This document shows positions 12,461-58,592 of a DNA stretch of 64,000 nt, piece by piece (the first letter of the stretch is position 1; every line of letters starts with the position of its first letter). The notes beneath the pieces are model-generated. The model ran no database searches. It was not told the DNA's origin and saw nothing but the letters and a program-made list of their open reading frames with translations. This DNA is from Ylistrum balloti (lineage: Eukaryota). The translations under genes and the position numbers were made by a program. The stretch lies in NCBI RefSeq assembly GCF_031769215.1, contig NW_026781973.1, positions 372,001 through 436,000 of the forward strand, in the 5' to 3' direction.

Positions 12461-15115
12461 GTTTATAACGTGCACATGTTATAAGAAAAATAAAACGTTG
12501 TCCATTCGTACACATTAGAATCTTAATCGTTTTGGAAATGTTGACATTACCCGTTGTCAGTCACCCTTTATAACAATCTTATCAGTTTATGATACTATGG
12601 CGACAAATCGGTCAATCAAGAGTTTATAGATAACGCCATTTATACTATAATTAGTACCGGAAGTGTCGGATAACAGTGACCGAGTTAATCACACCAGCTA
12701 TTTAACACTGCTTGTGCCTTAGTCCTGTAAATAATGTCAACAATTTTCAAAACCAAACAGTTAAAAATAATGTTATTTCATCTCACATATATAGATATAT
12801 CAGATATGGATCAGGAGTAGAATGAACTTCTTCCCCTTTTCTCAACCTCGCAGTAGAAATGTTACGGCGTAGACAAAATACGGCGTGAAGATGGCAACTC
12901 CTTTGGTATGTTAACCTCTTTGGATTGTGGACGTAGTGGTGTTCCCTGGTCACAGCTATGTGTTCTGTATTCCATGAATGTGAATCGGTGTATTTTGCAT
13001 TCCAAGCTTACAGAACTAAGATTATTGAATATGTGATATAATGTTGTAAACGGTATGAACACAGCTTGGACATTTTCTCAATCCAACCTCCATTTCTGTG
13101 CAGTGATCGAATTAAAATGAATCACAGTACAAAAGCACTGCCATGAACCCGACAGGGAGAGGAACCGATTGACTACGTTTATGATTGATTAGTTATATCT
13201 GCTGGTATAAAATGTTTATTTCCTTAGAGGTGGATGTATCATTTCAGGAAAAAGATTGTACAATGAATGTGGGGGACAATAAGACAAGAATTTGCCTGAG
13301 AAAACAGAAACCGCTCGAGCACACATCAGATGCTTTGTCCTGTCAGTGTAGCGAGTGCGATGCTTCGTTCCCAACAACTTATGATTTTAATACCAGGAAT
13401 ACTGTCTCGTGTGTAGCACATTAAAGAAATGTCATTCCCTCCATACCTTATCATATGCACTACCTATCAAAATAGGTTATCTCCCTACATTTAATATATA
13501 ATTTCGAGTTCCCTCCGGTGACTTACTTGCCCAAAACCCCGAGTTCCCTTCTGCTGTCGTGTTGTTTTGTGAAGAAGTAATTAATTATTTAACCAAATTA
13601 GAGATAAATCTTTACCACAGCCGATAACCAACATGTGTGACGATATTTGTAACTAAAAAGTTCGACAGAATGGAAACACACTGTAAAGAATCGTTTACAC
13701 TTCGAACACGGAACTGCGATAAGCTTTAACTTGATATCGCAGATAAGGAATTTCTTGTAATTCGCGAACCGAAACTAAATATAGATATGTTCCAGAGCAA
13801 TTCACTAATTAGTCACGGGAAAAAATATCCAACTTAAGATTAACAATTAGGAAAACCGGGCCCCATAATTCAATGTATATCATAATTTTCATCTTTTATT
13901 TGACAAGTTTAGAAAAATAAATATGGCAAAGTGCACGTGTTAGTTTTGAATAGTGCCACTATTCGACTGAACTAAATATGTATAGTGCAGGAAGAAAAAT
14001 CACGTTCCTCGAACCTATACGAGATATGACCCGAAAAATTGATGAATTTGTGTGAAGTTATAATCCAAGATACAGAATTATTTACTTTTGCCTTCCATCT
14101 CTCTGCACAAATTATACATTCATCATATTTTTACAATTAAAAAAAATCTGATATTTTTTCAAATAAAGCGAAAAAATACTAAAGATTTCAGTTTACCCAG
14201 TAATCCTAACATCGCGGGATGAAGCCACCTCACCTCGACTGTCTACAAATTGTTTCACTTTTCGTCCATTAATATTTTTAGGATTTTTCTATTGTCTTGT
14301 AATGTCTGATGTATTTACCGAGAATTTTGGCAAAATAATCAGATAGCGATGTTAAATTAAACCCGGACACTGGGATTTGTATAAACGTGACTGACCGAGT
14401 GATTCACAGAAAAAGTCACATCAACAATGAATGAAATTCTTGACGGGCGCAAATTCGTTTTCTGTACAACGAAATACACAAAAGAAAATCAAAAGCGAGA
14501 TGGTTTTACATGTTTTATCTTGTGGGGGGACACGGAGGATATTTCTCGGGAAAGGATTTATTGAACATTGACAAATATAAAGAGTCCAGGCCGTTGGCAC
14601 TTTTACACATGCAGTAAATCTAACTTTTCAGAAATTTTATTCGAATGGAGTTAATGAAAAAGTGATTTTTTAGCAATGCCCTCGTGATATGATAGAGACT
14701 CAGGTAACAAAATAAGATATTCATCGATGTCCTTGTTTAGATCTCTCAACATTTTTTTGAAATAAAAGTTTAAAAAGATATTTTAACAATATTTTATTTG
14801 ATGATATATTTTACATCATAAATAGGGATGTGTATGTGTAACAATCTCTCCTTATCCTTAAGTTTGTGTGATAAAGTGTGTCACGTCCTACTGTCTCACA
14901 CTCCTTACCGTGTGATTATAAGTAGATGTATATCATCCACATATCAGCTTCATTTGATCCCAGTAAAAAGTCCAGAGAGATAAACTTGTCACTTAAGTGT
15001 AAGAATCTTCGCAGTGTCTTAACTAGTCAATCTAATGACCAATAAATCACGCGCAACAGACGTCAACCTGTCGCTGCATCATGTCCTATTGGACTAATGC
15101 GCCGTAGTTAGAGAA

Positions 15116-15481
15116 CTATTTTTTCTCGGGTATGGGTAATGGCGGAGCGCCATGATGTGACACGGCTATGTTACTGAAGAATAAGCCACATGATTCACAA
15201 ACGGGAGCCAGAAAACAATTTATAACTGTCCCGAAGCATTTTTGACACTGGTTGCATTGGATAATGAACATGCGCATGCCTGGTGTGCAGCACCACACGT
15301 GCGTATACGTCAGAAGCGCAAACTCGAGACCCCAGTAAAACGCCACAAATATTCCAGTAAAGATGGCGCATAAATTGTAACAACAGGTCTTCGTGCATCT
15401 GTAGCAGATGAACGTCACCTTCCAGATACACTCGACGCTGTGGGTACCATACGGCTCGGCAAAGACGTCCTCAAACTCTAC
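15116..15481 (-). CDS. CAV: Caveolin B, terminal core exon (121 aa + stop)
   Basis: Acceptor gttgtag at 15482-15484, then VEFEDVFAEPYGTHSVECIWKVTF...FYWGLEFA...HVWCCTP...APVCESCGLFFSNIAVSHHGAPPLPIPEKK*. Confidence 0.95.
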   Translation of the reverse strand, partial: VEFEDVFAEPYGTHSVECIWKVTFICYRCTKTCCYNLCAIFTGIFVAFYWGLEFALLTYTHVWCCTPGMRMFIIQCNQCQKCFGTVINCFLAPVCESCGLFFSNIAVSHHGAPPLPIPEKK

Positions 15482-17912
15482 CTACAACAGAAATAATAGT
15501 GTTATTTCTTACCTGTCTTCCTACATAGTCTGTAACGGAAACATGTCAGTAGTTTCAAATTGAAGTTGTCTGAAGCTTCAAAATGAAATTGAGAAGAAGT
15601 TCTTTAAAATAACCAAACAAACAAACAAAAAATTAAAATAAAATGAAACTGTCATTTATTTCACCCAAACAATGTGGAAATAGAAACACGCGCTACAGGA
15701 ACAAGCTGGATAACAGACAAACTAAGTTCCACCAAGCACTTCTTGTCGCACAATAAAAGAAATATTTTTTCCAAACTGTAACATGAAGACAACCATAAAC
15801 TTTACGTTATCACTCAACAACTCTTAACATCTACGAGTTTCGCAATTACTGCAGCTGAGAGTTGTGTTAATTGGGGAAACAGAAATGTTGATATCAAGAA
15901 ATGGAAATGACGGTTATCTAGTTGCTCGCGATATGAGAAATCTGAAAATAAATGCATCATTTAACAGAGAATATACTTGTTTATTTGTAACAAGAAGTCT
16001 AAGACCATTTAAAGGTACACTCAAACGGTTAGATGGAAAGACAACATACATTTGATACAGTTTTATCACTCAGCTGATAGTGTAATACCGTTGTCAGATT
16101 ACATGGAGTACATAGATAAATCAAAACCGCACATTCCAGGTTTTAGGTCTTGTTTCTTTTTAATACAAATTCGAGAACGTAAATGTATCGAAATATGAGA
16201 GTAGGAACTTACGACCGGAAGTAATGGACTGGTTTTAATGAATCCTCCGGAAATCGCCAAACTGCGCGTGACAATTATTATCGTGACACCTATCTGCTAC
16301 CTTCAGTAATCTGTCATGGTACCATCAATTATACGTATCCGGCATCAGAACAGATCAGCTTTACACTCTGTATCCTTTTGTTCTCTGTCATTTTAATTTG
16401 TTTTTCATGGTTCCATCATTCCTGTCCACGTCAGCCAAGTCATGATGAAGTGGCACAGATAACCAGCTTGATATTTGTACCAACTGGAAGTTTTCCCAGT
16501 CTGTCTGCGTCACTGAGATAACACCCATCCCAAACTTCACAGCAATATTCTAATATTGGAAGTACGGATGCTTTGCAGATTCTGCCTAAAGTTTGTCTAT
16601 TCAATATGTATTTAAGTTTACGGAGAATACTTACCTGTTTGGGTGTATCATACGTCCTAAACTCTACTTCTGTCAGTCAATGTAAGTATTTCAGTAGAAG
16701 AGATGGAAACAGCGTAATCTTTAAGAATATTAGCTTTACCTTCATTTGAAATTTCAAGATTACCAAAATTGTTATGAAGGGGAGGTATAGTATTGGCTAT
16801 GTCAGATGTTTTTAGTAGTCTGCGGACAAATTTCTTTAATACGTTTCTTTACATTATTTTTAGATTATTTACATGAATGCGTTGTTTCCGGAAATTAGTC
16901 AGACTACCTGGTGAGCGATTAGTTTTGAATTTATTAAGAAGTCTGTTTCCTTAATTCTCGCCGTAAGCCTTATTTGAACCAGGGCTTGTCATTCAGTCGA
17001 ATCGTAACAATTGTAGTCGGGATTCATTCCCCGGCAAAGGCCAAGAATTTATCTGTAAAAATATCACACATGTCGTCCGGGATATATGTCGCCGAAAACA
17101 AATCTAACCAGTCAGTATCGTCAAATCTGTTGTTCAAAAGTTCAAAATTAGCGCCACTATAACATGCTATCTTTCTTTCATATGTCACCGTTCAGTCCCT
17201 ACAGTCAATTCAACAGTAGTCGATTTATGGTCTGTAAGGTTATTATCTATGTCAATTACATCAGAAAAACTTCGGTTTTAGCTTATTTTCTTCTAGAGTT
17301 ATATATTGAAAAAATTACAAGAAACTCTACGAATATACTGCAGGATACGCCGCACCTCAAGACTTGTCTAAATGATTGTTTAACTCGATACAACAGGACA
17401 AGGATATGTCTGGTAGTATCTGTTATTATATATCTTAATCACGAACCACGCGCTATTCTTCTATCATATATGGTATGAATTGTGTTATTCCGAGTATTTG
17501 TCATGAAATCAAGATTTTTATAAGTCTCTGAGACACACTTAAGTTATTTATCAATTTGCATTGCTTCGTTGATAATTATATATAAATATATATATATATA
17601 TATATTAATTTCAAGACAATCTTTGCTTCAAGTTAAGCGGATAAGACATTGATACATTCAGGCGTGTGATAATGTTATTCCAGTAGCGTTCAAAACATTT
17701 AATAATCGCTCATATTTTTTTAAAATATCGTAAGTCATTCAACCACAATTATTTTTCCTAAAACTGTGTAATTAGTAATGAAGGACTTGTCTACATATAC
17801 GGCTTTGATACTCTGTATTCTGAATAATCTATACGGACGTGAACTTATCGTACACGTCATGACAATGGAGTGCATTATTTCTACAGTATTTGTGTTACCT
17901 GTTGGTACTAAC

Positions 17913-17990
17913 CTGAAGGTGCGTGTTGATCTCATTCGCATCTCGAATTTCTAAATCTACATTCGCCTTCCCTCCATCATCGTCATCCAT
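17913..17990 (-). CDS. CAV: Caveolin B variable first coding exon V1 (26 aa)
   Basis: aaaATGG; MDDDDGGKANVDLEIRDANEINTHLQ; donor cag|gttagt, phase 0. Confidence 0.9.
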
Positions 17991-18464
17991 TTTGTTTTTA
18001 TATCGATTTCAATGAACTGTTTATCAAAAAGTCTGGTCAGTACTCCCTTACGAAGTGCGGTGAGATTTTACACATTAATCAGCTGACCTATATTTGATTA
18101 TTGCCTATTGTTTTAGGTCCTTTTTGTGTCTTTGTTTTGGTTGTAGTCAGGTTTGTGTCTATACAACTGAGTGGTGTAGTTTAGCCCGTATCAATTACCT
18201 ACCTGTATTAGAGACAATTACCTATACCTTCGTTACAGGAGGTCGCGACCATACTAGTCACGATAGTAAGTATTTATATACCGATCTGTTGCTTAATGTG
18301 TTTTATTATATCAGTATCAACGTGCCCTGAATGGTCGATAACTGTATCAAGTTACATGGAATTCTGGTAAAGAATGTAGTACAAAATTTAAATGTATACT
18401 TATATCAAAATTAAATTTTATCTATTTTACAACACTTGCCAAACAAGCTTTTCCAACTTAAACT

Positions 18465-18645
18465 AACCAGTGTTGTTGACCCGGGTGGAAGCGCGGGGGT
18501 GTCTTACTGTGTGAGGAAACCAGAATACCCGGAGAAAACCCACGTGGTTGGGCAGGTGACCCCATACCTTTTCACGTCAATTACGGCCATCGGACGACTA
18601 GGTGAAAGGCGAGTGGGCTGCCACTGCGCCATCCGACCACACTGA
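18465..18645 (-). mobile_element. tRNA-derived SINE (degenerate)
   Basis: Minus strand has an A-box-like ATGGCGCAGTGG (18621-18632) followed by GTGGGTTTTCTCCGGGTATTCTGGTTTCC (18515-18543), a motif typical of invertebrate/fish tRNA-head SINEs. B box not recognisable. Confidence 0.65.
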
Positions 18646-18917
18646 ACCATACTTATATCTTTCACGTTATTACGTATTAATATGTCATTTATTTATTCAA
18701 TTTTTTTCACCCCGATTTTTTTTACACGAAATGTAAAACCGTTTTTTTATGTTTCCCCCGATTTTTTTCACGTTACATGTAAAACAAGACACATGCGATG
18801 CTTGTTGATGACTTAATAAGTCATGTATATATAGACATGATTAGTTATGTAAAATATATAGAACAAAGGTTTATAAACCATATTTTAATCTCCCACATTT
18901 AAATATTTCGGCTCTTA

Positions 18918-18961
18918 GCATCACTGACGAGTCCTAAAAGGACGAAACAGCTGTATAATGC
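18918..18961 (+). ncRNA. Type I hammerhead ribozyme (minimal, Penelope-like-element type)
   Basis: gcatca CTGACGA gtcc-taaaa-ggac GAAA cagctg TA taatgc: intact core, stem II, palindromic stem III, GUA cleavage triplet, stem I with 5/6 pairs. Confidence 0.75.
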
Positions 18962-19855
18962 AACTTCGCTTACGTGTCCTAAAAGGACGAAACATCTGTA
19001 TAATGCAGCATCGCTGACGTGTCCTAGAAGGACGGAACAGCTATATGATGTAGCAACGCTGACGTGTCCTTGAAGGAGGAAGCAGCTGTATGATGTAGCA
19101 ACGCTGACGTGTCCTTGAAGGACGAAGCAGCTGTATGATGTAGCAACGCTGACGTGTCCTTGAAGGACGAAGCAGCTGTATGATGTAGCAACGCTGACGT
19201 GTCCTAGAAGGACGAAGCAGCTGTATGATGTAGCAACGCTGACGTGTCCTTGAAGGACGAAGCAGCTGTATGATGTAGCAACGCTGACGTGTCCTTGAAG
19301 GACGAAGCAGCTGTATGATGTAGCAACGCTGACGTGTCCTTGAAGGACGAAGCAGCTGTATGATGAAGCAACGCTGACGTGTCCTTGAAGGACGAAGCAG
19401 CTGTATGATGTAGCAACGCTGACGTGTCCTTGAAGGACGAAGCAGCTGTATGATGTAGCAACGCTGACGTGTCCTTGAAGGACGAAGCAGCTGTATGAAG
19501 CAACGCTGACGTGTCCTTGAAGGACGAAGCATGTATGTGAAGCAACGCTGACGTGTCCTTGAAGGACGAAGCAGCTGTATGATGTAGCAACGCTGACGTG
19601 TCCTTGAAGGACGAAGCAGCTGTATGATGTAGCAACGCTGACGTGTCCTTGAAGGACGAAGCAGCTGTATGATGTAGCAACGCTGACGTGTCCTTGAAGG
19701 ACGAAGCAGCTGTATGATGTAGCAACGCTGACGTGTCCTTGAAGGACGAAGCAGCTGTATGATGTAGCAACGCTGACGTGTCCTTGAAGGACGAAGCAGC
19801 TGTATGATGTAGCAACGCTGACGTGTCCTTGAAGGACGAAGCAGCTTTATGACGC
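18918..19855 (+). repeat. 45-bp tandem array of hammerhead-derived monomers (~21 copies)
   Basis: Unit gcaacg ctgacgt gtcc ttgaa ggac gaag cagctg ta tgatgta; period 45 (18924, 18969, 19014). Confidence 0.93.
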
Positions 19856-20469
19856 GGGTAAATTCATCGTTTGACTCTATTATATTGATTAGATCTGTAT
19901 TAAAGGTGCTATTCACTTATTTGTCTTCAGTTTCTTATAATAAACATTTTTGTATGTATATATCATAACCATAACGACGATTTCTTGTCATCATCAAATT
20001 CAGACCGAGGTTATATCATCAACGCTTATGTGTTCGATCATAATAATTACACGATACATGTGTTATTGTTGCAGAATAAATTTTGCAAGAAAATATGTTA
20101 TTACTTGGTTTGCAATTGTTTGATAAATAAGTACGAATACTGAGATTTATTCTCTATTTAAGGCCCTTGGACTTAGAGCTGTTAGATGTATTGACAGAAT
20201 AAGAGTTCCGGTATATTTCCCATGTTTGTTCATACCCAAATTTTCTATGGGAGGCAGGTTTGATTTATTTTTGCCTATTGTTTTGTACAGTTTTTGTTTT
20301 TTATGTAAGTAAACTGATATATTTCAAAAAGAAATTAAAATTACGATAGATGTCCTTAATGAAGCTGTTTCTGTTACACAAACTTGTTTTTATTGTCCAC
20401 AGGATGAACTTAAACTTTCATTTTCTGATTTTGAGAGCGTGACATTTCTAACTTGGATTGACCAACAGT

Positions 20470-20570
20470 TGCATTGCAGGTGTTGTCGATGAAGCAGAAT
20501 ACACTTACTCTTCCGCAACACCTGATCTAATTCTCCTTGTACTTTTTCAGGAGTCAACCTTTAAATCTTT
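20470..20570 (+). mobile_element. Dispersed repeat copy, probably a Penelope-like element 3' UTR
   Basis: gatgaagcagaatacacttactcttccgcaacacctgatctaattctcc; homologous to 25815, 32115, 43940 and 44130. Confidence 0.6.
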
Positions 20571-21568
20571 CTCCTGTTCAAATTTTGCCGTAGTTTCATT
20601 GAATTTGAGTTTGGATTATAATTATGATGACATATAGGTATTTCTTTCTTTCTCTTTATGTTTTTTTTCGTCTCCTATGTTTCAACATTTCAGACCCCGA
20701 GCATACATGGCGAGTCAGAGAACAAAACAAACGTGTAATATAGGTGATAGGTTGATTAATTATTCAACTCTACTGTATATAATTCCTTACAATTGTAGTG
20801 ATAGTTGCAATCAAACCTTTTGTACAAATTTATGCACTAATATCTAAACAAAATAACAAAAACCTATAATTTAAGCCCTTAGAATCACTCACAAGTGTAA
20901 GAAGGAGAAAACAGTTGTATAATGCAGTTTGATTTATCATTTGACTCTACTGTTTCTAAGTCTAAATTTGCATTTAAAGATGCAGTTTAATTGTGTGTCT
21001 TTTGTACAATATTCCATGTTTCAGTAATTATCTCAATGTCATCTTAATGATTCTAATAAAGAGAGAAGTATTTTTGACGAAGTATTATTTAGACATCAAC
21101 TGATGTATGGCTATAGGCAATACTTAGCATGGTAACATTGGTAATGTTTGACTTATCTCCCTTTACACATGGCATCAATACCTTATAACATTAGTACCGT
21201 GAAGGGTCATAAAAAAACCTCATAACCATAATGCTCTGTAATGACGGCTTGTCATTCTATGGTTAAAGTCAGGTTCCGGTTTATTGACTTAAATGTCATA
21301 TAAAACATGATTTTACTATGTGAACACCTTACTTTTGTATTGGTTTGGAAATATGAAGGCTAAAAAACTGAAAAGTAAACCCCTGGCAACATTTTCAGAA
21401 CCTTGATATCGATTTATAAGAAACGCTCTATGTGCGTTGCATTACTATCACTCGACCTGTCGGTATAAATAACAGTTTAATACCGTTTATAAAGATATCC
21501 ACTTGATTGACCATCTGTGGCAGTCTGTACATACCTCCGTCAGTGGTCAGATGTTAGGTCACTCTAAC

Positions 21569-21608
21569 CAGAGACGTATATTACACATATATGTTATATA
21601 TGTCTCTG
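21569..21608. mobile_element. 40-bp hairpin mini-MITE (cagagac...gtctctg)
   Basis: Inverted ends, flanked by ctctaac/ctataac; homologous to 23701-23745. Confidence 0.5.
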
Positions 21609-22149
21609 CTATAACTGAAAGATAGATTGGTATATGGACCGCTTCAGATATTAACCATTTACTGAAAACGACCTCTACTCCTTAAGTACAGTTTAATCAA
21701 AGATCGAACAACTATTGTTCATACTGAAATCACTCGTTAAAATCCGATCAGGCGGTGGCCATCTTGGTATTCAATGTTATTTAACTACCTTCAAATATAT
21801 AAATTGTGAGTCTTACTATCAGCTCATTAGAGGTAAATAGGAGGTACTTTTCTGATCCAGTAATTTCAATTACTTCACATTCAGATACTCATCCCTAAAT
21901 AACAAGGTTATCTTGATTTTCTCTTCAAGTAAAACAAAATTCAGATGTCCTCCTGTCTTCAGAAAGTTCAATATTTACATATAATTTTGTATAAGCATAC
22001 ATTGACTTTTAACAAACACTATTATCTCTTTGTGATCACATCCTGGTTCCAGTATCACCACTATGCAATATGAATAGAAGATTTTACATAAGAGATTTAC
22101 ATAACAAATTTAGGGTCAGATACAGTAGAGCCAAACAACGAATTATACC

Positions 22150-22190
22150 GCATCATACAAGTGATTCGTCCTTCTAGGACTGGTCTGTAC
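22150..22190 (-). ncRNA. Degenerate hammerhead ribozyme relic
   Basis: Minus strand cagacca gtcc tagaa ggac gaat cacttg ta tgatgc; core mutated. Confidence 0.55.
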
Positions 22191-22626
22191 TTAGAAGGTG
22201 ACTGATGAAAAAAATCCAGACTGTCGAAATCAATGTAAAACACCTGACGGATCGGTGCAGTAATTCCTAAATTAAATAAATTTCATGATATTCCATAGTG
22301 AATAATTTCAAAGAATATTAAGTATGTTTGTATATTCTGAACCCTACCGTTATTCGAATGAGTTAAAACTTGTTTGTTTACAATGTACGTCATTTGCTAA
22401 AACAGATATGGATGGTACCAGATATGGATGGTACCAGATATGGATGGTAAGGATGTTAAAAGTTATTTCTGTTCACATTTACCAGGAGAGGTACAAGTTG
22501 TTGACTGTTTACATTTATCAGAAAATAAAATAACTGGATTATTGTACCTGGAAATGAGAGTTTAAAAGTTTCATTTTCAATTACAATAACTGAAGAAATT
22601 AACAAAAGGAGTCACTGGAAGATTAC

Positions 22627-22701
22627 CTGTAGATGGGCGTTGATGTCGTTGGAATCCCTCTGAACCAAGTCAACATTAACCCCCGCGATGTCATCGTCCA
22701 T
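22627..22701 (-). CDS. CAV: Caveolin B variable first coding exon V2 (25 aa)
   Basis: aagATGG; MDDDIAGVNVDLVQRDSNDINAHLQ; donor cag|gtaatc, phase 0. Confidence 0.9.
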
Positions 22702-23700
22702 CTTCGGTTATTAAAAATTCTATCCGGTCACTTGTCGTCTCACAGTTACATTAGGTATCTTATTTATCTAGGCAGTGTGTGTCATTCTCAATCAGACACT
22801 TCTGATAAGAAATGAGAAATAAGCTGGCCACGGAATCAAAGAACAGACAGAACAGAGAGTATTGAATTAAAAGGCGTCGACGATGTGTTAGAATGACGGG
22901 AACTTTAGGGAAGACAAACTAGGACCTGTTTTAAACACTGTTATACAAATTATGTTATCTTTATAGGTATAACACTACCTACGTAAACACTGCGACTTTG
23001 GTGCACATAAACAATGCACAACCTAAAAAGACCATTTTATGTCATTGTTCTCTTGTCAGTCCCCATCCTTAACTTTAAATATCCGGTACTATAGCGCCGG
23101 CACTGACATGTAAGACCGCGTGATTGTGATAATATCTCTAATCATTTTGTTTTACGGAGTGTTAGGTCCTTGTATTCGAGCGAGGAGAATAATTAATGGA
23201 GTGTAACGTAGGTACGTATCAAACATTCGAGACCATTCCTTTCAGGCGATAGAACATGTTTTACTGACAGCTGAAAAATCATCCAAATATTTTTGTACCT
23301 GTTTCTGTGTTATCTTAGACATATTAATTGTTTAGTGGACATTGTTTAAACTACTGGACATTGTTCAAACTGTTGGTAAACTGCTATATATTTTTATTGG
23401 TACCTGAAGAGCGATTTTAGGTAAGGGGAATAACTCTAATAATATGAGTTAGTACAAAAGCATTAGCTGTGGAGCTCTTCACTATATAACACCAACTCCA
23501 TCGTCACTAAACTATTGTACGGCAAAATGATTGCTCATAGAAATATGTTAATAATCACCTGGAAATGTAGGCTGAGTGAGGGAACTTTTGAATTTTCTAG
23601 TTGTACTGATGATATTACGGTTGATTTTGGGACAGAAAAAGCTATATTTAGTGTAACGAAAGTGTTACATTAACATGAAATGATACGAAGTTATTGCGTA

Positions 23701-23745
23701 CAGAGACATATATAACACAATGTTAATGTGATATATACGTCTCTG
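23701..23745. mobile_element. 45-bp hairpin mini-MITE (cagagac...gtctctg)
   Basis: cagagacatatataacacaatgttaatgtgatatatacgtctctg; opposite orientation to the 21569 copy; flanks ttgcgta/tcgctta. Confidence 0.5.
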
Positions 23746-24082
23746 TCGCTTATTTCTGAGACTGTACAAATGGCACACAAATAAATAGCAACTTTTATTC
23801 AAATTTAAAGTTAGATACAATTATTTCGCGAGAATAAGTAGGAAACTGACTTGGAAATCCATTTTAAGTATGAAACCAAAGAAACGAAATATTACGACAC
23901 CAATTGATAAGATGATATTAACCGGAATGATTTTATCAGTTGGTTTCTTGGTATCTATATTTTAGACGCACAAAATTCACATGTACATATTTTGAAATAA
24001 TTACTGGGGAATCCTAAGCCTGCATGCGACGGGAAATTCACGACGTTCATTAACTTGACAAACAGATAAGTAAAATTCTCAC

Positions 24083-24148
24083 CTGTATATGGGCGTTTAT
24101 GTCGTTGACGTCACGGTTGTTTAAGTCGACGTTCACTGTGTCCCCCAT
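24083..24148 (-). CDS. CAV: Caveolin B variable first coding exon V3 (22 aa)
   Basis: aagATGG; MGDTVNVDLNNRDVNDINAHIQ; donor cag|gtgaga, phase 0. Confidence 0.9.
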
Positions 24149-25430
24149 CTTATTTATCTTTTAAATTAAAGAACACCATGACCTGTTCCAATACGATGTT
24201 AATGCGTTTTACATTTAATCTACATTACTGCTGTATATTATCCCTGTCTCTAAGCAGTATTGAAAAGGTTTGGAACGTAAACGAATTCAACATATTTTGC
24301 ATATAAATTGTCTGTTAGCTGACATTGAAGATAAGTGGTGCATATTGCGTTGGATGTGAAATGTGATTTGTGGATTCTCGGGTATTGTCCTCCACGTCAC
24401 AGACACGTCTATTACTATATTACCTATGCGGAGATAAGGCTTATTCAGAACTCGTCATGCATGCTAAGCTAATTAATTGTGTTAACACTTTGAGTTTATC
24501 TGAGATATGACGTAAGGCGTGAGCTGTTACATTTAAGATCAGATAGACAATATGGATCAGACTTTGACCAGTTTTTATATTTAGCCATTTATGTAACATA
24601 GGTTAAGTCCGTGTACTTGGTTAGAATACAAACCTTTCAGAACGACGTAAGTTACCAATGGAATATTTAAAAAAAGATTGGTTCTCGTCTTGGTATATGT
24701 TTTATGGTAAATATCCCGCACGTTTTGTCAATATTCTATGTAAAATGTCAGGATTTTCATATTTAAGATTTTAAGTAAACTGTCTTCAATATACGAAAAC
24801 CGGACTAATACAAATCTAACCATGTGGAGCTGTGCATGTGGGGTCAAAATGAAGGAACATGGGAACTAAGTAGAACGAATATGACGTATATTGACCTCGC
24901 CAAGTTGAAGGCACCTCTCAAAGAACACCTGATAATGTATTCGATCATCCGACGAAATTAATAAAATGATTTGTATTGAAATAATTTGACGAGGAGAGAT
25001 TAGAGGTATTAATGTATAGGATAGATAATAAAGTCCCCATCTCTAATGTTAAAAAGTACATATATAAACCTGTCATACCAGATAACTTAAGTAAGCACAT
25101 TTAAATGTTGAAAATTAAAACCTGAACGGAAGTTGACGACATTTTCCCACGTAAAGAAAACTGATATTTTAAGCGACATGTTATGTAGGTGGTAGATAAA
25201 TGTATGTTAAATACAAGAATGTCGTTGACAAGTAGAGCTAAAAGCGCTTACTATTTTGCGATGTTTTCTGGTTTACAGAGACAGTTCATATCTACTATAC
25301 TTTGTAAATAATTTCACTTTTGTTATTTTTAGAAGACTTCGGACAAGGTTTGGATGTTAGACAGAAATGCTATGATAAATGTTAGTTGAGCGTAAGTACT
25401 ATATCACTGTCATAATTAATTATCCTTTTT

Positions 25431-25778
25431 GAGCTTTTGACTGCCTTCCTTCTCGGATCGTTTAGGGGTTTTTGAGCTTTTGACTGCCTTCCTTCTCGGA
25501 TCGTTTAGGGGTTTTTGAGCTTTTGACTGCCTCCCTTCTCGGATCGTTTAGGGGTTTTTGAGCTTTTGACTGCCTCCCTTCTCGGATCGTTTAGGGGTTT
25601 TTGAGCTTTTGACTGCCTACCTTCTCGGATCGTTTAGGGGTTTTTGAGCTTTTGACTGCCTACCTTCTCGGATCGTTTAGGGGTTTTTGAGCTTTTGACT
25701 GCCTACCTTCTCGGATCGTTTAGGGGTTTTTGAGCTTTTGACTGCCTACCTTCTCGGATCGTTTAGGGGTTTTTGAGC
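25431..25778. repeat. 43-bp minisatellite, ~8 copies
   Basis: Unit gagcttttgactgcctaccttctcggatcgtttaggggttttt; starts at 25431 and 25474. Confidence 0.95.
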
Positions 25779-25814
25779 GATATCCTCATGATTTGTTACT
25801 CAGAACTCAGTTAT

Positions 25815-25900
25815 ATGGCGGGTGTAATTGACGAAGCAGAAGACGCTTACTCTTCCGGAACACCTTATCTTATTCTCCTTGTATTTCTTCAGGAGTATCC
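25815..25900 (+). mobile_element. Dispersed repeat copy, probably a Penelope-like element 3' UTR
   Basis: gacgaagcagaagacgcttactcttccggaacaccttatcttattctcc. Confidence 0.6.
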
Positions 25901-27284
25901 CTGCAAATCTGTCAATCATGTTAAAATTTTCTTTTGTTTTATGTTTTATGTTGATATGTTGGTGATGGGTTTTGGGAGACCTTTGCTATAACATTATAAC
26001 ATACACAACTAAAAGTACACCCACGACAAAAAAGTTAGTTCACCTAAGCAGGGGTTTCATATTTCAATCAATCCATTTAATTGACACATGACCTTTTAAG
26101 ATTAAGTGATAGCGATGATTTTAGATGTGTAATATTTAAAATTATACATGTTATGTTGAGACATATCGGGGAGATATTCAGAACCCTCAATTATATAACA
26201 CGATAGTTGTATCAACATTTCCACTGTAATGATAGATATAGACTGAACTGTTTTGGTTTTAAGACCGAGTGGGGAACAGTCACCGGGATATTGGAATAAA
26301 CCATGCTCATGATACTTGATCTTGAAATGTCTGTTGATGGACTTTCGTAATGATTGCTTTTGTCGATGTTCTTCACCAATGACCTATTAGTTCCACGAAA
26401 TGTTTGGTCATTTTAATCATCTGATGATTTTCCTGTCAGCTGCTGATAAGGGGGTGTTAGATCAAGCTGGTTATATCGGGTTTTTACTAGTATGTGTCCA
26501 GTTGTTTGATACCTTTAACGCCATGTTAGTGTAATTTAACTTTCTAAGTCAAATACAAATTTAGAATAAGATATATTGTCACAAAATCAGGAATTTTACA
26601 TTGTACATTTAGTACAGGATTCTAATGATAAGAATTGCTGAGACTTAGGAGGCTTCTGTTAACGTTAAAATTTGTAGAAATAGATGTCAAAAACACACGG
26701 GGAGGCGCACCCCCCCCAAAAAACTCAATAAATTCTATAAGTCTTATTTTAATATTAGATAATTTCAAAAGAATGTGGAATACATTTCTATACTCTTAAA
26801 CGTGCCATGATTAGAATGAATGAAAGATTGGCATACAAGTCCATAAGTCTGCCACATAATAAAGTTATAACATTTTTGTTTAATATTTTTGATGTGTTTT
26901 CTTTACATATTTGTTATACCCAGTATACCACATGTCTTACAAAAGTCACAACTGTAAATTTTATCAAAAGAAACTTCTGTGCGACATCCTTATTAATTAA
27001 CGTTGAGCCCTAGTCCGCCATTACTTAAACTATCGTACGTAGATAATCATATCGTATTGTAAATATGATAGGCGTTATCAGAAAACTGATAACTGAAGTT
27101 CCAGCATCATACTACAAAACACTACTACAGTCATTAGTATATGTTATCCTACAAGGCTGATATAATGTCTGAAATGACAAGCGGAGAAAACGAATCCTCA
27201 TTTGTATAGTCGTAAAACATTGTACACAAATACACATCCTTCATTTATAAGTAGATAGAATAGAGCTACATTATAAGTTAAATC

Positions 27285-27331
27285 GCACCCTACAGCTGAT
27301 TCGTCCTTCTAGGACGATTCGGCAGTGATGA
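27285..27331 (-). ncRNA. Degenerate hammerhead ribozyme relic
   Basis: Minus strand catca ctgccga atc gtcc tagaa ggac gaat cagctg ta gggtgc. Confidence 0.55.
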
Positions 27332-27464
27332 TAAAGGCTTGAATTTTGAAACCAATGAGGCAGCTGAGGAAAATTAAAACTGACTGAAAGAGATGAAACT
27401 ACCTATAGGGAGCATCACTATTACCATGATGGAAAATAGAAAATTTTCGTAAAATATACGTCAC

Positions 27465-27542
27465 CTGCACGTGGGAGTTCACTTCGTTGACGTCGCGGTT
27501 GTTTAAGTCCACGTTTACTGTATCTTTAATCTCATCATCCAT
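27465..27542 (-). CDS. CAV: Caveolin B variable first coding exon V4 (26 aa)
   Basis: aatATGG; MDDEIKDTVNVDLNNRDVNEVNSHVQ; donor cag|gtgacg, phase 0. Confidence 0.9.
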
Positions 27543-28799
27543 ATTGGAATTTCTTTAGTTGGTTAAATTATAGAACAGTCTATCCTGTAAGGCATACACG
27601 ATCATTTAACTAAGTCTTCATTCTAGATCATCTCAAATCTGTATGTTTAATATATAGTACAGTACAGGAGGTGACACTGTCTCCAAGCAATACCATAAAG
27701 TTTGATGAAGTATTTTATTTTTGGAATGGAAATGATTTTGAATAATCATTATCTGTCATTGACAATGAGTGCGTGAGTAAGGTGGTAAGGGGATCACACG
27801 GTAATCTGTCACGTGACGTATGAGGTACATTTGTAATTAGATAAGATTTATTCAAATCTCTTCTGGTGTGACATGCTAATTGAATAGTTGTTTGATCAGT
27901 GGTATAAGTACGCGTCAGATATATACTTAAACACACTGCATGTAAGATACTAGATAATTAATATCTAACCATTTATACTTGGACTAAAGATATTTATTTA
28001 CACTCAAAATGGTAATATAAAACAAGACAACTTATATTGCCCTCAATATTAATCCTGTGAGTTATGTCAGTTATGTCATGTCAAAATATGTAACTGTAAT
28101 GTGCACATGAAAGAAACAATCATGTTGATGACCCAAAAGCCAGCCAATGTACTATTCCAATCTTGTGAAATAGTACACGGAAAATACAGCAGTGTGTTCC
28201 AAAATGGTAAGGTCTTCTGCTTCATAGAGGAAACCCGTGTTACATGTCACATTCTCAAAGCGAACAAGGTATACCACAGCGGGACCAACAGACAAACTAA
28301 TGAGCATCATATACGTCCAGCTTCATATCGCTCAAAGAAATATAAGGTTTCTCATTGTTATTACTATGACGACCATAAAACTTCCCTAAGATTTTCAACA
28401 GCCCACAACCCTGTTTTATGAGGTTTTCTGTCGACTGACGATTTCTTGTATGAAAATAGTGATATTGAGAACATGCCCTCGAATATCGATTTAACTGCGA
28501 CATGTAAGCATCATAGGTTGGGAATCCAGGGATGTTGCTATCCAGAAATTCAGAAATGCATATAATTCATCCAGTATTAATTAAATATGTGGATCAGAAT
28601 GGAGAAAGATGTGAATAAAGGATAGTTAGCTAAGATTATTGAAGTCGTGGGAATGGATGCAACATTACCGAACATTATAGATAACCAGTGCATGGTTATT
28701 GGGTATCAAATAATTCCCTCGAGAACGGCGAGTCATAAAGTAATACAGAATGGTACTGCTCACGGATAACTAACTTTAGATAGTAGAATACACGTCTAC

Positions 28800-29420
28800 G
28801 TTAATATCTTAGCTCATCATCAGATAGCGAGTTCAAATCGCCTCGTGTCCGTCCGCCCGTCCTTATCAAATCTTGTTTTCGATATTTTAAAGAAGTACTG
28901 GACGAATCTTGTGTGTGTACCGCTTGATCCATATCTGTGGCCTTTTTAATTTGGAACTGATCAGTATAGCAGAATTATTGACGGACGGCCATCTTGAATT
29001 TTGAAAAAAAAAAGTTTGTTATCACTGTCTCTTGGGCAATAATGGGCGGATCTTTATTAGTTCGATTTGTTGGGATTTCGTTTTCATTGGCTCCTTGTTG
29101 TGCCATCCTGATTTTGGGATTTATAATGAAAAAAAGGTCGACAGGTGACCATTTGGATTTGGCCATTAAAGAAGATTATCGCTATTTTTTGTAGGGGAAT
29201 TTTCAAATTTCATGCAATTAAGAGCAAAAACACAAGAAAGAAAAAGGGAAAAAAAGAAAAAATAGCCAATTTCTAAAAACCAAACGATGGCGGGCGTCAA
29301 TATCCTTCTGGGATTTTCTTTGTTTAAATGATCAATTTAAATCAAGTTCTCCAACAACCGAATGGCGGAGCTATAACTTTCGGCATCAATTTCGAGATCA
29401 AGAAGAGTTTCTTTAATCTT
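28800..29420. mobile_element. Degenerate non-autonomous DNA-type repeat (ttagctca...gtccgtcc...gccatcttg family)
   Basis: Motif succession ttagctcatc, gtccgtccgcccgtcc, ggccatcttgaattt resembles non-autonomous elements common in bivalve genomes; class and boundaries uncertain. Confidence 0.4.
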
Positions 29421-44210: not shown

Positions 44211-44989
44211 TGACGATGTTTATTCCCTATTTTAGTTTGAATAAAGATTCTGTTGACATGTCGATATTTTCTTTCTTCATTTTGAATTATACAAATTATC
44301 TAAACAAGATAAGTAGTATCAAAAGACGTCGTACAGGATGACTATTATATACATAATCGATCAGAACTGTTACATGTATGTAAAGAGGAAGACACAATAC
44401 AGCCTATACATGATAATGTTAATTAGACGTACATTTTAAGCGTATGTCAATATTTCTGCTATCATTTTATAATAATAAAATAAGAAAAAAATAGGATGAA
44501 TCAACATTTACGTACAGATAGCTTTATTACAGTGGATGTTTACGATACGCTTACTAAACATACTTATGTACACTTAAGTTTCTAGACGCTCGCTAACATG
44601 TGTAAGGGTTGGTTTAATCGGATATCTACTGTAGGCGACTGAGTGAGTTAATAGTTTGTAAGATTGTTGAGTGGTCTGTACTTATGTTGATTGAGAGCTG
44701 TATATTTACGATATAAACTTCATTCGGGGTTTTGTTTGACTTCAGTTGTGGGTATCGGAGAGCTGAATGGTGATTTTTGGTGTGTAGGTGGTGTATATTG
44801 TTTGGGCGGATATAAATGCACGTACTTTTCATGTATCAGGCAGAGAGTGCACACGAAGCAATAGTCCTGCCGCTAACTCTCTCGCCTTTCCACAGTGTCC
44901 CGGGTAGGAAACATGTAAAATGATAGGGCATTGTAAATAGCGGAGTACAGATATATTGTAAATAAACTACCTATCACAGACGTATAACC

Positions 44990-47732
44990 TCTCACTGTTA
45001 CAGTTGATACAATCTCGCTAACTCACATTTGTATCAACTCTCGCTAACACAGTTGATACAATCACGCTAACTCACAGTGGTATCAACTCTCACTAACACA
45101 GGTGATACAACTCTCGCTAACACAGTTGATACAAACTCGCCAACACAGTTGATACAATCTCGCTAACACAGTTGATACAATCTCGCTAACACATTTGTAT
45201 CAACTCTCGTTAACACAGTTGACACAGACTCGCTAACGCACATTTGTATCATCTCTCGCTAACACAGTTGATACAATCTCGCTAACACAATTGTATCAAC
45301 TCTCGCTAACACAGTTGATACAATCTCGCTAACACAGTTGATACAATCTCGCTAACACAGTTGATACAAAATCCCTTACTCACATTTGTATCATCTCTCG
45401 CTAACACAGATGATACAAACGCGCTAACTCACATTTGTATCAACTCTCGTTAACACAGTTGATACAAACGCGCTAACTCACATTTGTATCAACTCTCGCT
45501 AACACAGTTGATACAATCTCGCTAACACAGTTGATACAAACTCCCTAACTCACATTTGTATCATCTCTCGCTAACACAGTTGGTACAATCTTGCTTACTC
45601 ACATTTCTATTAACTCTCGCTAACACAGTTGATACAATCTCGCTAACTCACATTTGTATCAACTCTCGTTATCATAGTTGGCACAGACTCGCTAACTCAC
45701 ATTTGTATCATCTCTCGCTAACACAGTTGATACAAACTCGCTAACTCACATTTGTATCAACTCTCGCTAACACAGTTGATACAAACGCGCTAACTCACAT
45801 TTGTATCAACTCTCGCTAACACAGTTGAAACAATCTCGCTAACACAGTTGTATCAACTCTCGCTAACACAGTTGATACAAACTCGATACAACTCTCGCTA
45901 TCGCTAACTCACATTTGTATCAACTCTCGCTAACACAGTTGATACAAACGCGCTAACTCACATTTGTATCAACTCTCGCTAACACAGTTGATACAAACGC
46001 GCTAACTCACATTTGTATCAACTCTCGCTAACACAGTTGATACAAACTAACGCACATTTGTATCAACTCTCGTTAACACAGTTGATACAAACGCGCTAAC
46101 ACAGTTGTATCAACTCTCGCTAACACAGTTGATACAATCTCGCTAACACAGTTGATACAAACGCGCTAACTCACATTTGTATCAACTCTCGCTAACACAG
46201 TTGATACAAACTCGCTAACTCACATTTGTATCAACTCTCGCTAACACAGTTGATACAAACGCGCTAACTCACATTTGTATCAACTCTCGCTAACACAGTT
46301 GATACAAACTCGCTAACTCACATTTGTATCAACTCTCGCTAACACAGTTGATACAAACGCGCTAACTCACATTTGTATCAACTCTCGCTAACACAGTTGA
46401 CACAGACTCGCTAACGCACATTTGTATCAACTCTCGTTAACACAGTTGATACAAACGCGCTAACTCACATTTGTATCAACTCTCGCTAACACAGTTGATA
46501 CAAACTCGCTAACTCACATTTGTATCAACTCTCGCTAACACAGTTGATACAAACGCGCTAACTCACATTTGTATCATCTCTCGCTAACACAGATGATACA
46601 AACGCGCTAACTCACATTTGTATCAACTCTCGCTAACACAGTTGTACAATCTCGCTAACACAGTTGAACACACACATTTGTATACTCGCTAACACAGTTG
46701 ATACAAACGCGCTAACTCACATTTGTATCAACTCTCGCTAACACAGTTGATACAAACTCGCTAACTCACATTTGTATCAACTCTCGTTAACACAGTTGAC
46801 ACAGACTCGCTAACGCACATTTGTATCAACTCTCGTTAACACAGTTGATACAAACTCGCTAACTCACATTTGTATCAACTCTCGTTAACACAGTTGACAC
46901 CGACTCGCTAACTCACATTTGTATCAACTCTCGTTAACACAGTTGATACAAACGCGCTAACTCACATTTGTATCAACTCTCGCTAACACAGTTGATACAA
47001 ACTCGCTAACTCACATTTGTATCAACTCTCGCTAACACAGTTGATACAAACTCGCTAACTCACATTTGTATCAACTCTCGTTAACACAGTTGACACAGAC
47101 TCGCTAACTCACATTTGTATCATCTCTCGCTAACACAGTTGACACAGACTCGCTAACTCACATTTGTGTCACCTCTCGCTAACTCACATTTGTATGAACT
47201 CTCGCTAACACAGTTGATACAAACTCGCTAACTCACATTTGTATCAACTCTCGTTAACACAGTTGACACAGACTCGCTAACTCACATTTGTATCAACTCT
47301 CGCTAACACAGTTGATACAATCTCGCTAACACAGTTGATACAATCTCGCCAACACAGTTGATTCAAACTCGCCACCACAGTTGATACAATCTCGCTAACA
47401 CAGTTGATACAAACTCCCTAACTCACATTTGTATCATCTCTCGCTAACACAGTTGATACTCGCTAACTCACATTTGTATCAATCTCTCTAACACAGTTGA
47501 TACAAACGCGCTAACACAGTTGATACAAACGCGCTAACTCACATTTGTATCAACTCTCGCTAACACAGTTGATACAAACGCGCTAACTCACATTTGTATC
47601 AACTCTCGCTAACACAGTTGACACAGACTCGCTAACTCACATTTGTGTCACCTCTCGCTAACTCACATTTGTATGAACTCTCGCTAACACAGTTGATACA
47701 AACTCGCTAACTCACATTTGTATCAACTCTCA
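44990..47732. repeat. ~23/49-bp composite minisatellite with internal inverted repeat
   Basis: Subunits ctcgctaacacagttgatacaaa and ctcgctaactcacatttgtatcaact. Confidence 0.93.
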
Positions 47733-47849
47733 TGTTAAACAGCTAACAGTCTAACAGAATGACCGTAAACTCTCGCAAACACGCTTTAAAAAAGATCATT
47801 TTAGTTGGTAGTACTGTGTGTATTTAATCATTTATCCACCACCTGAAAC

Positions 47850-57374: not shown

Positions 57375-58592
57375 GAACCAGACGGATAGCCGTGATCAGT
57401 TACAGCACCAGATGGACAGCTGTGATCAGTCACAGCACCAGACGGACAGCTGTGATCAGTTACAGCACCAGACGGACATCAGTTACATCACCAGACGGAC
57501 AGCTGTGATCAGTTATATCACCAGACGGATAGCCGTGATCAGTGACAGCACCAGATGGACAGCCGTGATCAGTCACACCACCAGATGGACAGCTGTGATT
57601 AGTTACAGCACCAGACGGACAGCTGTGATCAGTTATATCACCAGACGGATAGCCGTGATCAGTGACAGCACCAGATAGACAGCCGTGATCAGTTACAGCA
57701 CCAGACGAACAGCCGTGATCAGTTACAGCACCAGACGGACAGCTGTGATCAGTTAAAGCACCAGACGGACAGCTGTGATTAGTTACAGCACCAGACGGAC
57801 AGCGGTGATCAGTTACAGCACCAGACGGACAGCCGTGATCAGTTACAGCACCAGACGGACAGCCGTGATCAGTTATAGCACCAGACGGACAGCTGTGATC
57901 AGTTACAGCACCAGACGGATAGTCGTGATCAGTCACAGCACCAGATGGATAGCCGTGATCAGTTACAGCACCAGACGGACAGCCGTGATCAGGCACAGCA
58001 CCAGACGGACAGCTGTGATCAGATACAGCACCAGACGGACAGCTGTGATCAGTTACAGCACCAGACGAACAGCCGTGATCAGTTACAGCACCAGACCAAC
58101 AGACGTGATCAGTTACAGCACCAGACCAACAGACGTGATCAGTTACAGCACCAGACGGACAGCTGTGATCAGTTACAGCACCAGACGGATAGCCGTGATC
58201 AGTTACAGCACCAAACGGACAGCCTGATCAGGCACAGCACCAGACGGACAGCTGTGATTAGTTATATCACCAGACGGACAACTGTGATCAGTTACAGCAC
58301 CAGACGGATAGCCGTGATCAGTTACAGCACCAGATGGATAGCCGTGATCAGTTACAGCACCAGACGGACAGCCGTGATCAGGCACAGCACCAGACGGACA
58401 GCTGTGATTAGTTACAGCACCACACGGACAGCCGTGATCAGTTACAGCACCAGACGGACAGCCGTGATCAGTTACAGCACCAGACGGACAGCCGTGATCA
58501 GTCACAGCACCAGACGGACAGCCGTGATCAGTTACAGCACCAGACGGACAGCCGTGATCAGTTACAGCACCAGACGGACAGCCGTGATCAAT
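57375..58592. repeat. 30-bp minisatellite, ~40 copies, followed by a (GTT)n tract (~58605-58655)
   Basis: Unit cagcaccagacggacagccgtgatcagtta. Confidence 0.95.

What the first reader, a model, noticed from the sequence alone, without database searches (positions are those of the whole stretch)
15116..27542. Variable-constant caveolin gene: four alternative ATG-bearing first exons feed one core exon
Exons at 17913, 22627, 24083 and 27465 each have their own ATG, encode a paralogous NVDL..RDxN..N.H.Q peptide and end in a phase-0 CAG|GT donor. I found no core exon between them, so all must splice to 15481. V3 and V4 share DTVNVDLNNRDVN with four silent and no replacement changes, which indicates purifying selection. 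The layout parallels clustered protocadherins and UGT1A (variable first exons plus a constant exon); I do not know of it in caveolins. Caveat: a weak AAG acceptor 9 nt before the V3 ATG is in frame, so serial inclusion cannot be excluded.
Basis: partly seen in the sequence, partly recalled or inferred. Interest (0 to 1): 0.85.

Follow-up and report, generated by a model that had tools for sequence, protein, structure and literature searches.

The report
Scallop caveolin gene with alternative first exons
One caveolin gene of the saucer scallop Ylistrum balloti has four interchangeable start exons, each encoding its own version of the short loop that locks caveolin subunits together, all apparently spliced to one shared main exon; this gene layout is well known in other families, and the databases already list three such isoforms in two other scallops.

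Summary
On the minus strand, four ATG-bearing mini-exons (27542-27465, 24148-24083, 22701-22627, 17990-17913) each end in a phase-0 CAG|GT donor. They lie upstream of one caveolin core exon (15481-15116). tblastn and a profile HMM find no other core-like exon between them.

The window is Ylistrum balloti (100% match to GCA_031769215.1). It holds five tandem caveolin genes, and only the second has several first exons.

- RefSeq lists isoforms X1-X3 in Mizuhopecten yessoensis and Argopecten irradians, with one identical core and N-termini orthologous to V1, V2 and V4.
- The exon order is the same in those genomes. In Pecten maximus only the distal exon and V2 could be seen.
- Orthologous exons are saturated at synonymous sites (pS 0.5-0.9) but nearly unchanged at replacement sites (pN 0.02-0.08 for V1 and V2).
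- Each exon class has its own conserved upstream non-coding block.
- Every exon has an in-frame stop 9-72 nt before its ATG and no conserved in-frame acceptor, so serial inclusion is unlikely.

V3 is a Ylistrum-lineage duplicate of V4 that kept the upstream blocks. The variable exon encodes the pin motif (human CAV1 residues 49-60). This is a new member of a known kind (multiple variable first exons), of moderate interest.

The parts
27465..27542 (-). Variable first exon V4, coding part (ATG to the last base before GT), 26 codons. It is the positional orthologue of the distal exon of Mizuhopecten, Argopecten and Pecten.
   Evidence: Flank orthology. In-frame TAA at -15 and no in-frame AG.
27655..27888 (-). 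Conserved non-coding blocks upstream of V4, including TTGCTTGGAGACAG at 27690-27677. Putative promoter or 5'UTR elements.
   Evidence: blastn hits to L001, L002 and L005 upstream regions. Alignment, motif search.
24083..24148 (-). Variable first exon V3, coding part, 22 codons. It is a duplicate of the V4 unit, seen only in Ylistrum among the four species.
   Evidence: Against V4: pS 0.51, pN 0.12. No positional orthologue in L001, L002 or L005.
24244..24499 (-). Upstream blocks of V3 that keep the elements conserved upstream of V4-type exons (CTGCTTAGAGACAG at 24257-24244; block at 24499-24442).
   Evidence: V3 matches V4 at 71% of the columns that are invariant in the four orthologues, against 30% elsewhere.
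22627..22701 (-). Variable first exon V2, coding part, 25 codons.
   Evidence: Orthologues in My, Ai and Pm are 88-96% identical in protein with pS 0.58-0.86.
22912..23091 (-). Conserved non-coding block about 210-390 nt upstream of the V2 ATG.
   Evidence: 77-79% identity to Pecten and Mizuhopecten, also found in Argopecten.
17913..17990 (-). Variable first exon V1, coding part, 26 codons, nearest to the core.
   Evidence: Orthologues are 92-96% identical in protein with pS 0.69-0.89. In-frame TGA at -21 and no in-frame AG in any species.
17991..18281 (-). Conserved non-coding region upstream of V1.
   Evidence: blastn of window 18281-17900 against L001 19841-20241 gives 70% over 415 nt. An L002 block lies at 18169-18084. 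Alignment.
15116..15481 (-). Constant (core) exon: 121 codons plus stop. It encodes the signature motif FEDVFAEP, the scaffolding domain, the spoke region and the C-terminal strand. It carries the only acceptor downstream of the four donors.
   Evidence: 86.6% and 84.9% nucleotide identity to L001 and L002. RNA contigs of related species cover only this exon and not the flanking intron.

Best explanation
This is one type-II (CAV1-like) caveolin gene of Ylistrum balloti, the second of five tandem caveolin genes.

Shown:
- It has four tandemly duplicated first exons, each with its own ATG, and a single constant exon.
- The products are four proteins of 143-147 aa that differ only in the first 22-26 residues.
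- Those residues are a short acidic tail plus the pin motif. In human CAV1 this loop lies over the signature motif of the neighbouring protomer and locks the disc-shaped oligomer.
- The constant exon supplies everything else.
- V1, V2 and V4 predate the split of four scallop lineages. V3 is a later copy of V4.

Inferred:
- Each variable exon has its own conserved upstream regulatory block and most likely its own promoter.
- The donor of the transcribed exon joins the only available downstream acceptor at 15481. The other variable exons lack usable acceptors and are removed as intron, as in UGT1A and the clustered protocadherins.
- Promoter choice therefore decides which pin variant a cell makes, and the variants plausibly tune how caveolin subunits assemble.
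For: Architecture:
- Four ATG exons with phase-0 GT donors and one core exon.
- No other core between them by tblastn or profile HMM, in the window and in two relatives.
- Same-species DNA contigs tile 14600-18900 without a break.

Use as alternatives:
- RefSeq isoforms X1-X3 of M. yessoensis and A. irradians have an identical core and N-termini orthologous to V1, V2 and V4.
- The submitter's own GenBank annotation of M. yessoensis also holds the V1+core protein (OWF53212.1).

Selection:
- V1 and V2 orthologue pairs have pS 0.52-0.89 against pN 0.017-0.084. For example, Ylistrum V2 against Pecten V2 has 12 silent changes and 1 replacement.
- The distal class has pN 0.06-0.21 at similar pS.
- V3 against V4 has pS 0.51 and pN 0.12, Fisher p 0.002-0.015.

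Own regulation:
- Class-specific upstream blocks are conserved across species whose silent sites are saturated.
- V3 kept 71% of the invariant upstream positions against 30% elsewhere.

Mutual exclusivity:
- Every one of 12 exons in 4 species has an in-frame stop 9-72 nt before the ATG.
- V1 has no in-frame AG in any species. The AGs at V2 and V3 are weak (40-55% pyrimidine) and not conserved.

Pin motif:
- phmmer aligns the variable peptide with human CAV1 residues 48-65 in 7SC0.
- The role of residues 49-60 is taken from PMC9094659 and PMC12330381.
Against: - No RNA of Y. balloti was available. The only run holding the locus is genomic DNA with flat 10x depth, so no junction from any of the four donors to 15481 has been seen in this species.
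- V3 has no orthologue and no isoform model anywhere.
- The gene appears unannotated in the Y. balloti and P. maximus protein sets held here.
- Transcription start sites are unknown. One shared upstream leader exon with mutually exclusive splicing is not excluded.
- The RefSeq isoforms are computed models. I could not inspect their transcript support.
- The functional effect of the pin variants is pure inference.
Confidence: 0.85

Rival explanations
1. There is one promoter and mutually exclusive splicing. A single non-coding leader exon upstream of V4 is spliced to one of the four ATG exons, which would then be internal exons, and from there to the core.
For: Several distal-type exons have an AG about 40-50 nt upstream of the ATG (W_V4 ccttacag|GATAGA, My gtag|GATAGA, Ai gcag|ATTTAGA; alignment). 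A 5'UTR acceptor is therefore conceivable. No start-site data exist.
Against: - That AG is absent in Pecten.
- V1, V2 and the distal class each carry different conserved upstream blocks 100-400 nt from the ATG. This fits separate promoters better than shared acceptors.
- V3 kept these blocks after duplication.
Confidence: 0.1
2. The exons are orphan relics. V2-V4 would be leftover first exons of tandem caveolin genes whose core exons were deleted, and only V1+core would be a working gene.
For: - The locus is a tandem array of two-exon caveolin genes, so loss of cores is a conceivable history.
- The gene is unannotated in this species.
- A degenerate V-like relic lies between genes D and C of Pecten.
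Against: - Relics would not keep ATG, frame, donor and amino-acid sequence while silent sites saturate. V2 has pN 0.017-0.084 at pS 0.52-0.86 across four species.
- The upstream blocks are conserved too.
- RefSeq joins the V2 and distal orthologues to the core in two species.
Confidence: 0.03
3. Serial inclusion: the V exons are internal cassette exons that can be strung together in frame, for example V4-V3-V2-core.
For: In-frame AGs exist 9 nt and 0 nt before the V3 ATG and 0 nt before the V2 ATG in the window. All donors are phase 0.
Against: - These AGs have poor pyrimidine tracts (0.40-0.55) and are absent at the same place in Mizuhopecten and Argopecten V2. The Pecten V2 has only a different weak AG at -6.
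- V1 and V4 have none.
- An in-frame stop sits 9-21 nt upstream of each window ATG.
- All six RefSeq isoforms carry exactly one variable peptide.
Confidence: 0.02

Closest known systems
RefSeq caveolin-1-like isoforms X1-X3 of Mizuhopecten yessoensis (XP_021347603/4/5) and Argopecten irradians (XP_069141569/70/71)
   Same: These are the orthologous gene. The core is 95-98% identical in protein. The N-termini are orthologous to V1, V2 and V4. The exon order is the same (distal, V2, V1, core), as are the neighbouring genes: two 132-aa caveolins upstream and a 265-267-aa caveolin downstream.
   Different: They have three variable exons rather than four, with no V3 copy. They exist as database models only, and I found no paper describing the arrangement. 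In Y. balloti itself the gene seems not to be annotated.
UGT1A and clustered protocadherin alpha/gamma loci (multiple variable first exons plus constant exons)
   Same: A tandem array of paralogous first exons, each with its own ATG and 5' splice site and no usable acceptor, joins a shared downstream constant part. There is lineage-specific gain of variable exons (birth and death). Each variable exon is preceded by its own conserved upstream sequence (PMC1885805, PMC3325998 abstracts).
   Different: - The scale is tiny: 3-4 exons of 66-78 nt, against large exons that encode whole ectodomains or substrate-binding domains.
- The variable part here is a 12-residue oligomer-locking loop plus a short tail.
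- There is a single constant exon.
- Promoters are inferred, not mapped.
- No stochastic or CTCF-based choice is implied.
Mammalian caveolin-1 alpha and beta isoforms
   Same: These are N-terminally different caveolin isoforms made from distinct mRNAs of one gene, with cell-type-specific use (Kogo et al. 2004, as cited in PMC5715436).
   Different: The beta form is a truncation that lacks the first 31 residues (my own knowledge). Both forms keep the same pin motif and the same exon 2. In the scallop gene, paralogous exons swap the pin motif itself.
Human CAV1 8S complex (PDB 7SC0)
   Same: Residues 11-135 of the scallop isoform align with CAV1 residues 48-173 at E 2.6e-26. The signature motif FEDV(I/F)AEP is shared. 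The exon boundary falls at the position of human K65|I66, which from my memory of the published gene structure (exons of 30, 165 and 342 coding nt) is the human exon 2/3 boundary.
   Different: The N-terminal disordered region is almost absent (about 8 residues against 48). The RDP proline of the pin is replaced by A, S or V in all four variants, while the four neighbouring paralogues keep RDP.

Membership tests
Caveolin (Pfam PF01146), type-II / CAV1-like | Caveolin domain above Pfam's gathering score | tested here: met
   The core exon alone scores 101.3 bits against a cut-off of 25, matching profile positions 24-132 of 133.
Caveolin (Pfam PF01146), type-II / CAV1-like | Signature motif FEDVIAEP at the start of the hook region | tested here: met
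   FEDVFAEP occupies residues 3-10 of the core exon and aligns to human residues 68-75.
Caveolin (Pfam PF01146), type-II / CAV1-like | [quoted passage not shown] | tested here: met
   The variable peptide NVDLxxRDxNxIN aligns with human 48-60 EIDLVNRDPKHLN. The proline is replaced in all four variants.
Caveolin (Pfam PF01146), type-II / CAV1-like | Assembly into a disc-shaped oligomer | not testable with these tools
   No multimer prediction or experiment was available.
Multiple-variable-first-exon gene (UGT1A / clustered Pcdh type) | Tandem paralogous first exons, each with its own start codon and 5' splice site | tested here: met
   Four exons in the window and three in each of two relatives, all ATG...CAG|GT or CAA|GT.
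Multiple-variable-first-exon gene (UGT1A / clustered Pcdh type) | One shared set of constant exons downstream and none between the variable exons | tested here: met
   tblastn and hmmsearch --max.
Multiple-variable-first-exon gene (UGT1A / clustered Pcdh type) | Variable exons lack a functional 3' splice acceptor, so only one enters each mRNA | tested here: inconclusive
   In-frame stops lie 9-72 nt upstream of all ATGs and there is no conserved in-frame AG. All RefSeq isoforms carry one variable peptide. Splicing itself was not observed in this species.
Multiple-variable-first-exon gene (UGT1A / clustered Pcdh type) | Each variable exon preceded by its own promoter | tested here: inconclusive
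   Class-specific conserved upstream blocks exist. There are no start-site data.
Multiple-variable-first-exon gene (UGT1A / clustered Pcdh type) | mRNAs that join each variable exon to the constant exon | tested here: inconclusive
   Met for three classes in relatives, as RefSeq models. RNA contigs of relatives cover the core exon and stop at its acceptor. There is no RNA of Y. balloti and nothing for V3.

The most novel reading that the evidence does not exclude
The three ancient exon classes could be a conserved system for swapping the pin motif. Each variant would lock caveolin protomers differently and so set disc stability, protomer number, or which isoforms and neighbouring paralogues can co-assemble. 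Separate promoters would deploy the variants in different tissues or stresses. That would make the scallop gene a natural allelic series for the least understood and evolutionarily youngest structural element of caveolins.
Probability: 0.2. Interest if true: 0.65.

Novelty: new member of a known kind. Interest (0 to 1): 0.4.

Why it matters
For caveolin biology this offers a natural experiment. Evolution has kept three to four versions of the pin motif on an otherwise identical protein while silent sites saturated. The class-specific residues are the two between DL and RD, the one that replaces the RDP proline, and the tail. This argues that these residues matter for function. Expressing the isoforms separately and together could show what the pin contributes to disc assembly.

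For genome annotation it adds a gene that seems to be missing from the Y. balloti and P. maximus gene sets. It is also a clean invertebrate example of the variable-first-exon layout, with birth of a new variable exon together with its regulatory blocks. It does not reveal a new mechanism.

Tried and rejected
- RNA evidence in the window's species failed. The look-up of sequencing runs gave RNA runs that hold only 4-6% of the words, which are relatives, and one run with 94%. That run proved to be genomic DNA with flat 10x depth across introns.
- I laid reads on 14600-18900 rather than on V2-V4. That stretch avoids the 353-nt and 937-nt tandem arrays and lets relatives' transcripts map to the conserved core. 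The result showed transcription of the core only, with contigs ending at the acceptor, and a faint contig of organism D on V1. No junction was seen.
- The first protein search, with the core alone, returned a single cluster. A profile search was needed for the wider family.
- The Pecten maximus locus could be fetched only up to V2. Its V1 and core lie beyond the 10-kb flank, so I cannot say whether the gene is intact there.
- The sigma-70 promoter scan is meaningless for an animal gene and is disregarded.
- Rfam at gathering thresholds found nothing in 14000-29000.
- I did not look up the exact spliced Y. balloti proteins, because they have no reference and would have had to be typed.
- I did not run a structure prediction. 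A monomer model would not inform on the inter-protomer role of the pin.
Full report
**What is there.** All features lie on the minus strand. The core exon runs from 15481 to 15119, with the stop codon at 15118-15116. It follows a good acceptor (tttctgttgtag|GTAGAG). It encodes 121 residues starting VEFEDVFAEPYG and matches Pfam Caveolin at 101 bits against a cut-off of 25.

Upstream are four short exons, each opening with ATG and ending in CAG|GT in phase 0:
- V1, 17990-17913
- V2, 22701-22627
- V3, 24148-24083
- V4, 27542-27465

They encode related peptides of 22-26 residues. These find each other by tblastn at E 1e-6 to 1e-15.

**Context.** tblastn with the core finds five core exons in the window, all on the minus strand: 483-160, 15481-15119, 32795-32469, 43586-43254 and 52938-52630. 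Single first-exon-like peptides lie upstream of the other four. So this is a tandem array of five two-exon caveolin genes, and only the second has several first exons.

Nothing core-like lies between 15481 and 32469. A profile HMM run without filters scores the true core at 201.8 bits and nothing in that interval above 0.2 bits. The same holds for the orthologous intervals of two relatives.

The window is Ylistrum balloti. Locus L003 from GCA_031769215.1 (contig JAUZWB010000861.1) is 100% identical to window 44953-22457.

**Evidence from relatives.** A protein search with the core returned one 90% cluster of six RefSeq proteins. These are caveolin-1-like isoforms X1, X2 and X3 of Mizuhopecten yessoensis and of Argopecten irradians. 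Within each species the three share an identical core. They differ only in an N-terminal peptide that is the orthologue of V1, V2 or the V3/V4 type.

In both genomes the exons lie in the same order (distal, V2, V1, core) with no core between them. The neighbours are also the same: two 132-aa caveolins upstream and a 265-267-aa caveolin downstream.

Pecten maximus has the distal exon and V2 in the same place. Its V1 and core lie beyond the DNA I could fetch.

To my knowledge, NCBI's pipeline reports alternative isoforms only with transcript support. I could not check that here.

**Selection.**
- Core: pS is 0.51-0.59 and pN is 0.012-0.026 between species.
- V1 and V2: pS is 0.52-0.89 and pN is 0.017-0.084. 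For example, Ylistrum against Pecten V2 has 12 silent changes and 1 replacement.
- Distal class: it changes faster, with pN 0.06-0.21, mostly in the tail.

Every orthologous exon keeps its ATG, frame and GT donor. Exons that were relics of dead genes would not behave this way.

**V3 and V4.** Flanking similarity shows that V4 is the positional orthologue of the single distal exon of the other three species. V3 has no positional orthologue. It is a duplicate of the V4 unit, and not a recent one (pS 0.51 on about 13 silent sites). Replacements are scarcer than silent changes (Fisher p 0.002-0.015).

V3 also carries the three upstream blocks that are conserved in front of all distal-type exons, including TTGCTTRGAGACAG. 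It matches V4 at 71% of the positions that are invariant among the four orthologues, against 30% elsewhere. The multiple alignment favours this contrast somewhat.

**Regulation and exclusivity.** Each class has its own conserved upstream non-coding block:
- V4: 27888-27655
- V2: 23091-22912, 77-79% identical to Pecten and Mizuhopecten
- V1: 18281-17991

These persist although silent sites are saturated, and the blocks differ between classes. This is what separate promoters or 5'UTRs would leave. No start site has been mapped, so it remains an inference.

All twelve exons examined have an in-frame stop 9-72 nt before the ATG. V1 has no in-frame AG in any species. The AGs before the window's V2 and V3 have weak pyrimidine tracts and are not conserved. 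Serial inclusion is therefore unlikely, and none of the six RefSeq proteins carries more than one variable peptide.

**Reads.** No RNA run of Y. balloti was offered. The one run that holds the locus (X24) covers exons and introns evenly at about 10x, so it is genomic DNA. It tiles 14600-18900 without a break, which confirms the assembly there. RNA contigs of three related species map only to the core exon at about 88% identity, not to the intron, and end at or near the acceptor. So splicing from the four donors has not been observed in this species.

**What the variable part is.** phmmer aligns the scallop isoform with human CAV1 in the cryo-EM structure 7SC0 at E 2.6e-26. The variable peptide NVDLINRDVNDINAH-MQ pairs with human 48-65 EIDLVNRDPKHLNDDVVK.

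Residues 49-60 are the pin motif. This loop lies over the signature motif of the neighbouring protomer, locks the protomers together and is needed for caveola assembly (PMC9094659). It is confined to type-II caveolins (PMC12330381).

So the variable exon carries the lock, and the constant exon carries the signature motif it covers. The class-specific residues are conserved within each class across species. All four variants have A, S or V where the neighbouring paralogues keep the RDP proline. A different assembly behaviour of the isoforms is a reasonable guess and no more.

**Comparison and novelty.** Genes with multiple variable first exons and shared constant exons are a long-known and common layout: UGT1, GCNT2, clustered protocadherins, plectin, NOS1 (PMC1885805). 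They show birth-and-death evolution of the variable exons, as seen here with V3.

Mammalian CAV1 makes alpha and beta forms from distinct mRNAs (Kogo 2004, cited in PMC5715436), but these do not swap paralogous pin motifs.

I found no paper on variable first exons in caveolins or on scallop caveolin genes. Among the 120 cluster representatives listed from the profile search, only the scallop cluster and one hemichordate entry are named as isoforms. The arrangement is, however, already present as isoform models in RefSeq for two scallops.

I file it as a new member of a known kind. The finding is real, and in Y. balloti the gene is apparently unannotated. It is moderately interesting, mainly as a natural series of pin-motif variants.

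Noticed in passing
window 18916-19852 (+ strand): A 45-nt x 21 tandem array. Its first unit (18918-18961) matches Rfam Hammerhead_1 at 32.2 bits, just under the gathering score of 34, with E 7.9e-6 and an intact CUGACGAG...GAAAC core. Later units read CUGACGUG. It lies on the strand opposite to the caveolin gene, so it would not cut the caveolin pre-mRNA. A similar unit lies between the distal exon and V2 of M. yessoensis (L001 13364-13411).
   Followed up: partly
window 18488-18631: A very high-copy element with a tRNA-like T-arm (GGGAATCGAACCCCGGAC). Word depth is about 20,000 in the same-species DNA run and hundreds to thousands in relatives' RNA runs. It is probably a SINE.
   Followed up: no
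window 16472-17335: A repeated element fragment inside the V1-core intron. Depth is 60-600 against a 10x background in the DNA run, with many internal joints.
   Followed up: no
window 25426-25778: A 43-nt x 8.2 minisatellite with 99% matches, between V3 and V4.
   Followed up: no
window 15116-27542; L005 35687-45686: The multi-first-exon caveolin gene seems absent from the Y. balloti and P. maximus protein sets held in the collection. The exons are intact in Y. balloti, and the distal exon and V2 are intact in P. maximus.
   Followed up: partly
L005 6678-6716 (Pecten maximus): A weak V-like peptide, VDLSNRYVSDSNA, between caveolin genes D and C. It may be a decayed variable-exon relic.
   Followed up: no
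window 15419-15475: Highly expressed RNA contigs of relatives (depth 150-440) match only these 57 nt of the core. They carry an upstream ...NEINTDIQ peptide, so they come from a paralogous caveolin with a V1-like first exon elsewhere in those genomes.
   Followed up: no
window 44900-47800 and 57400-58600: Long minisatellite-like arrays in the introns or flanks of caveolin genes D and E, seen as repeated tblastn noise hits.
   Followed up: no
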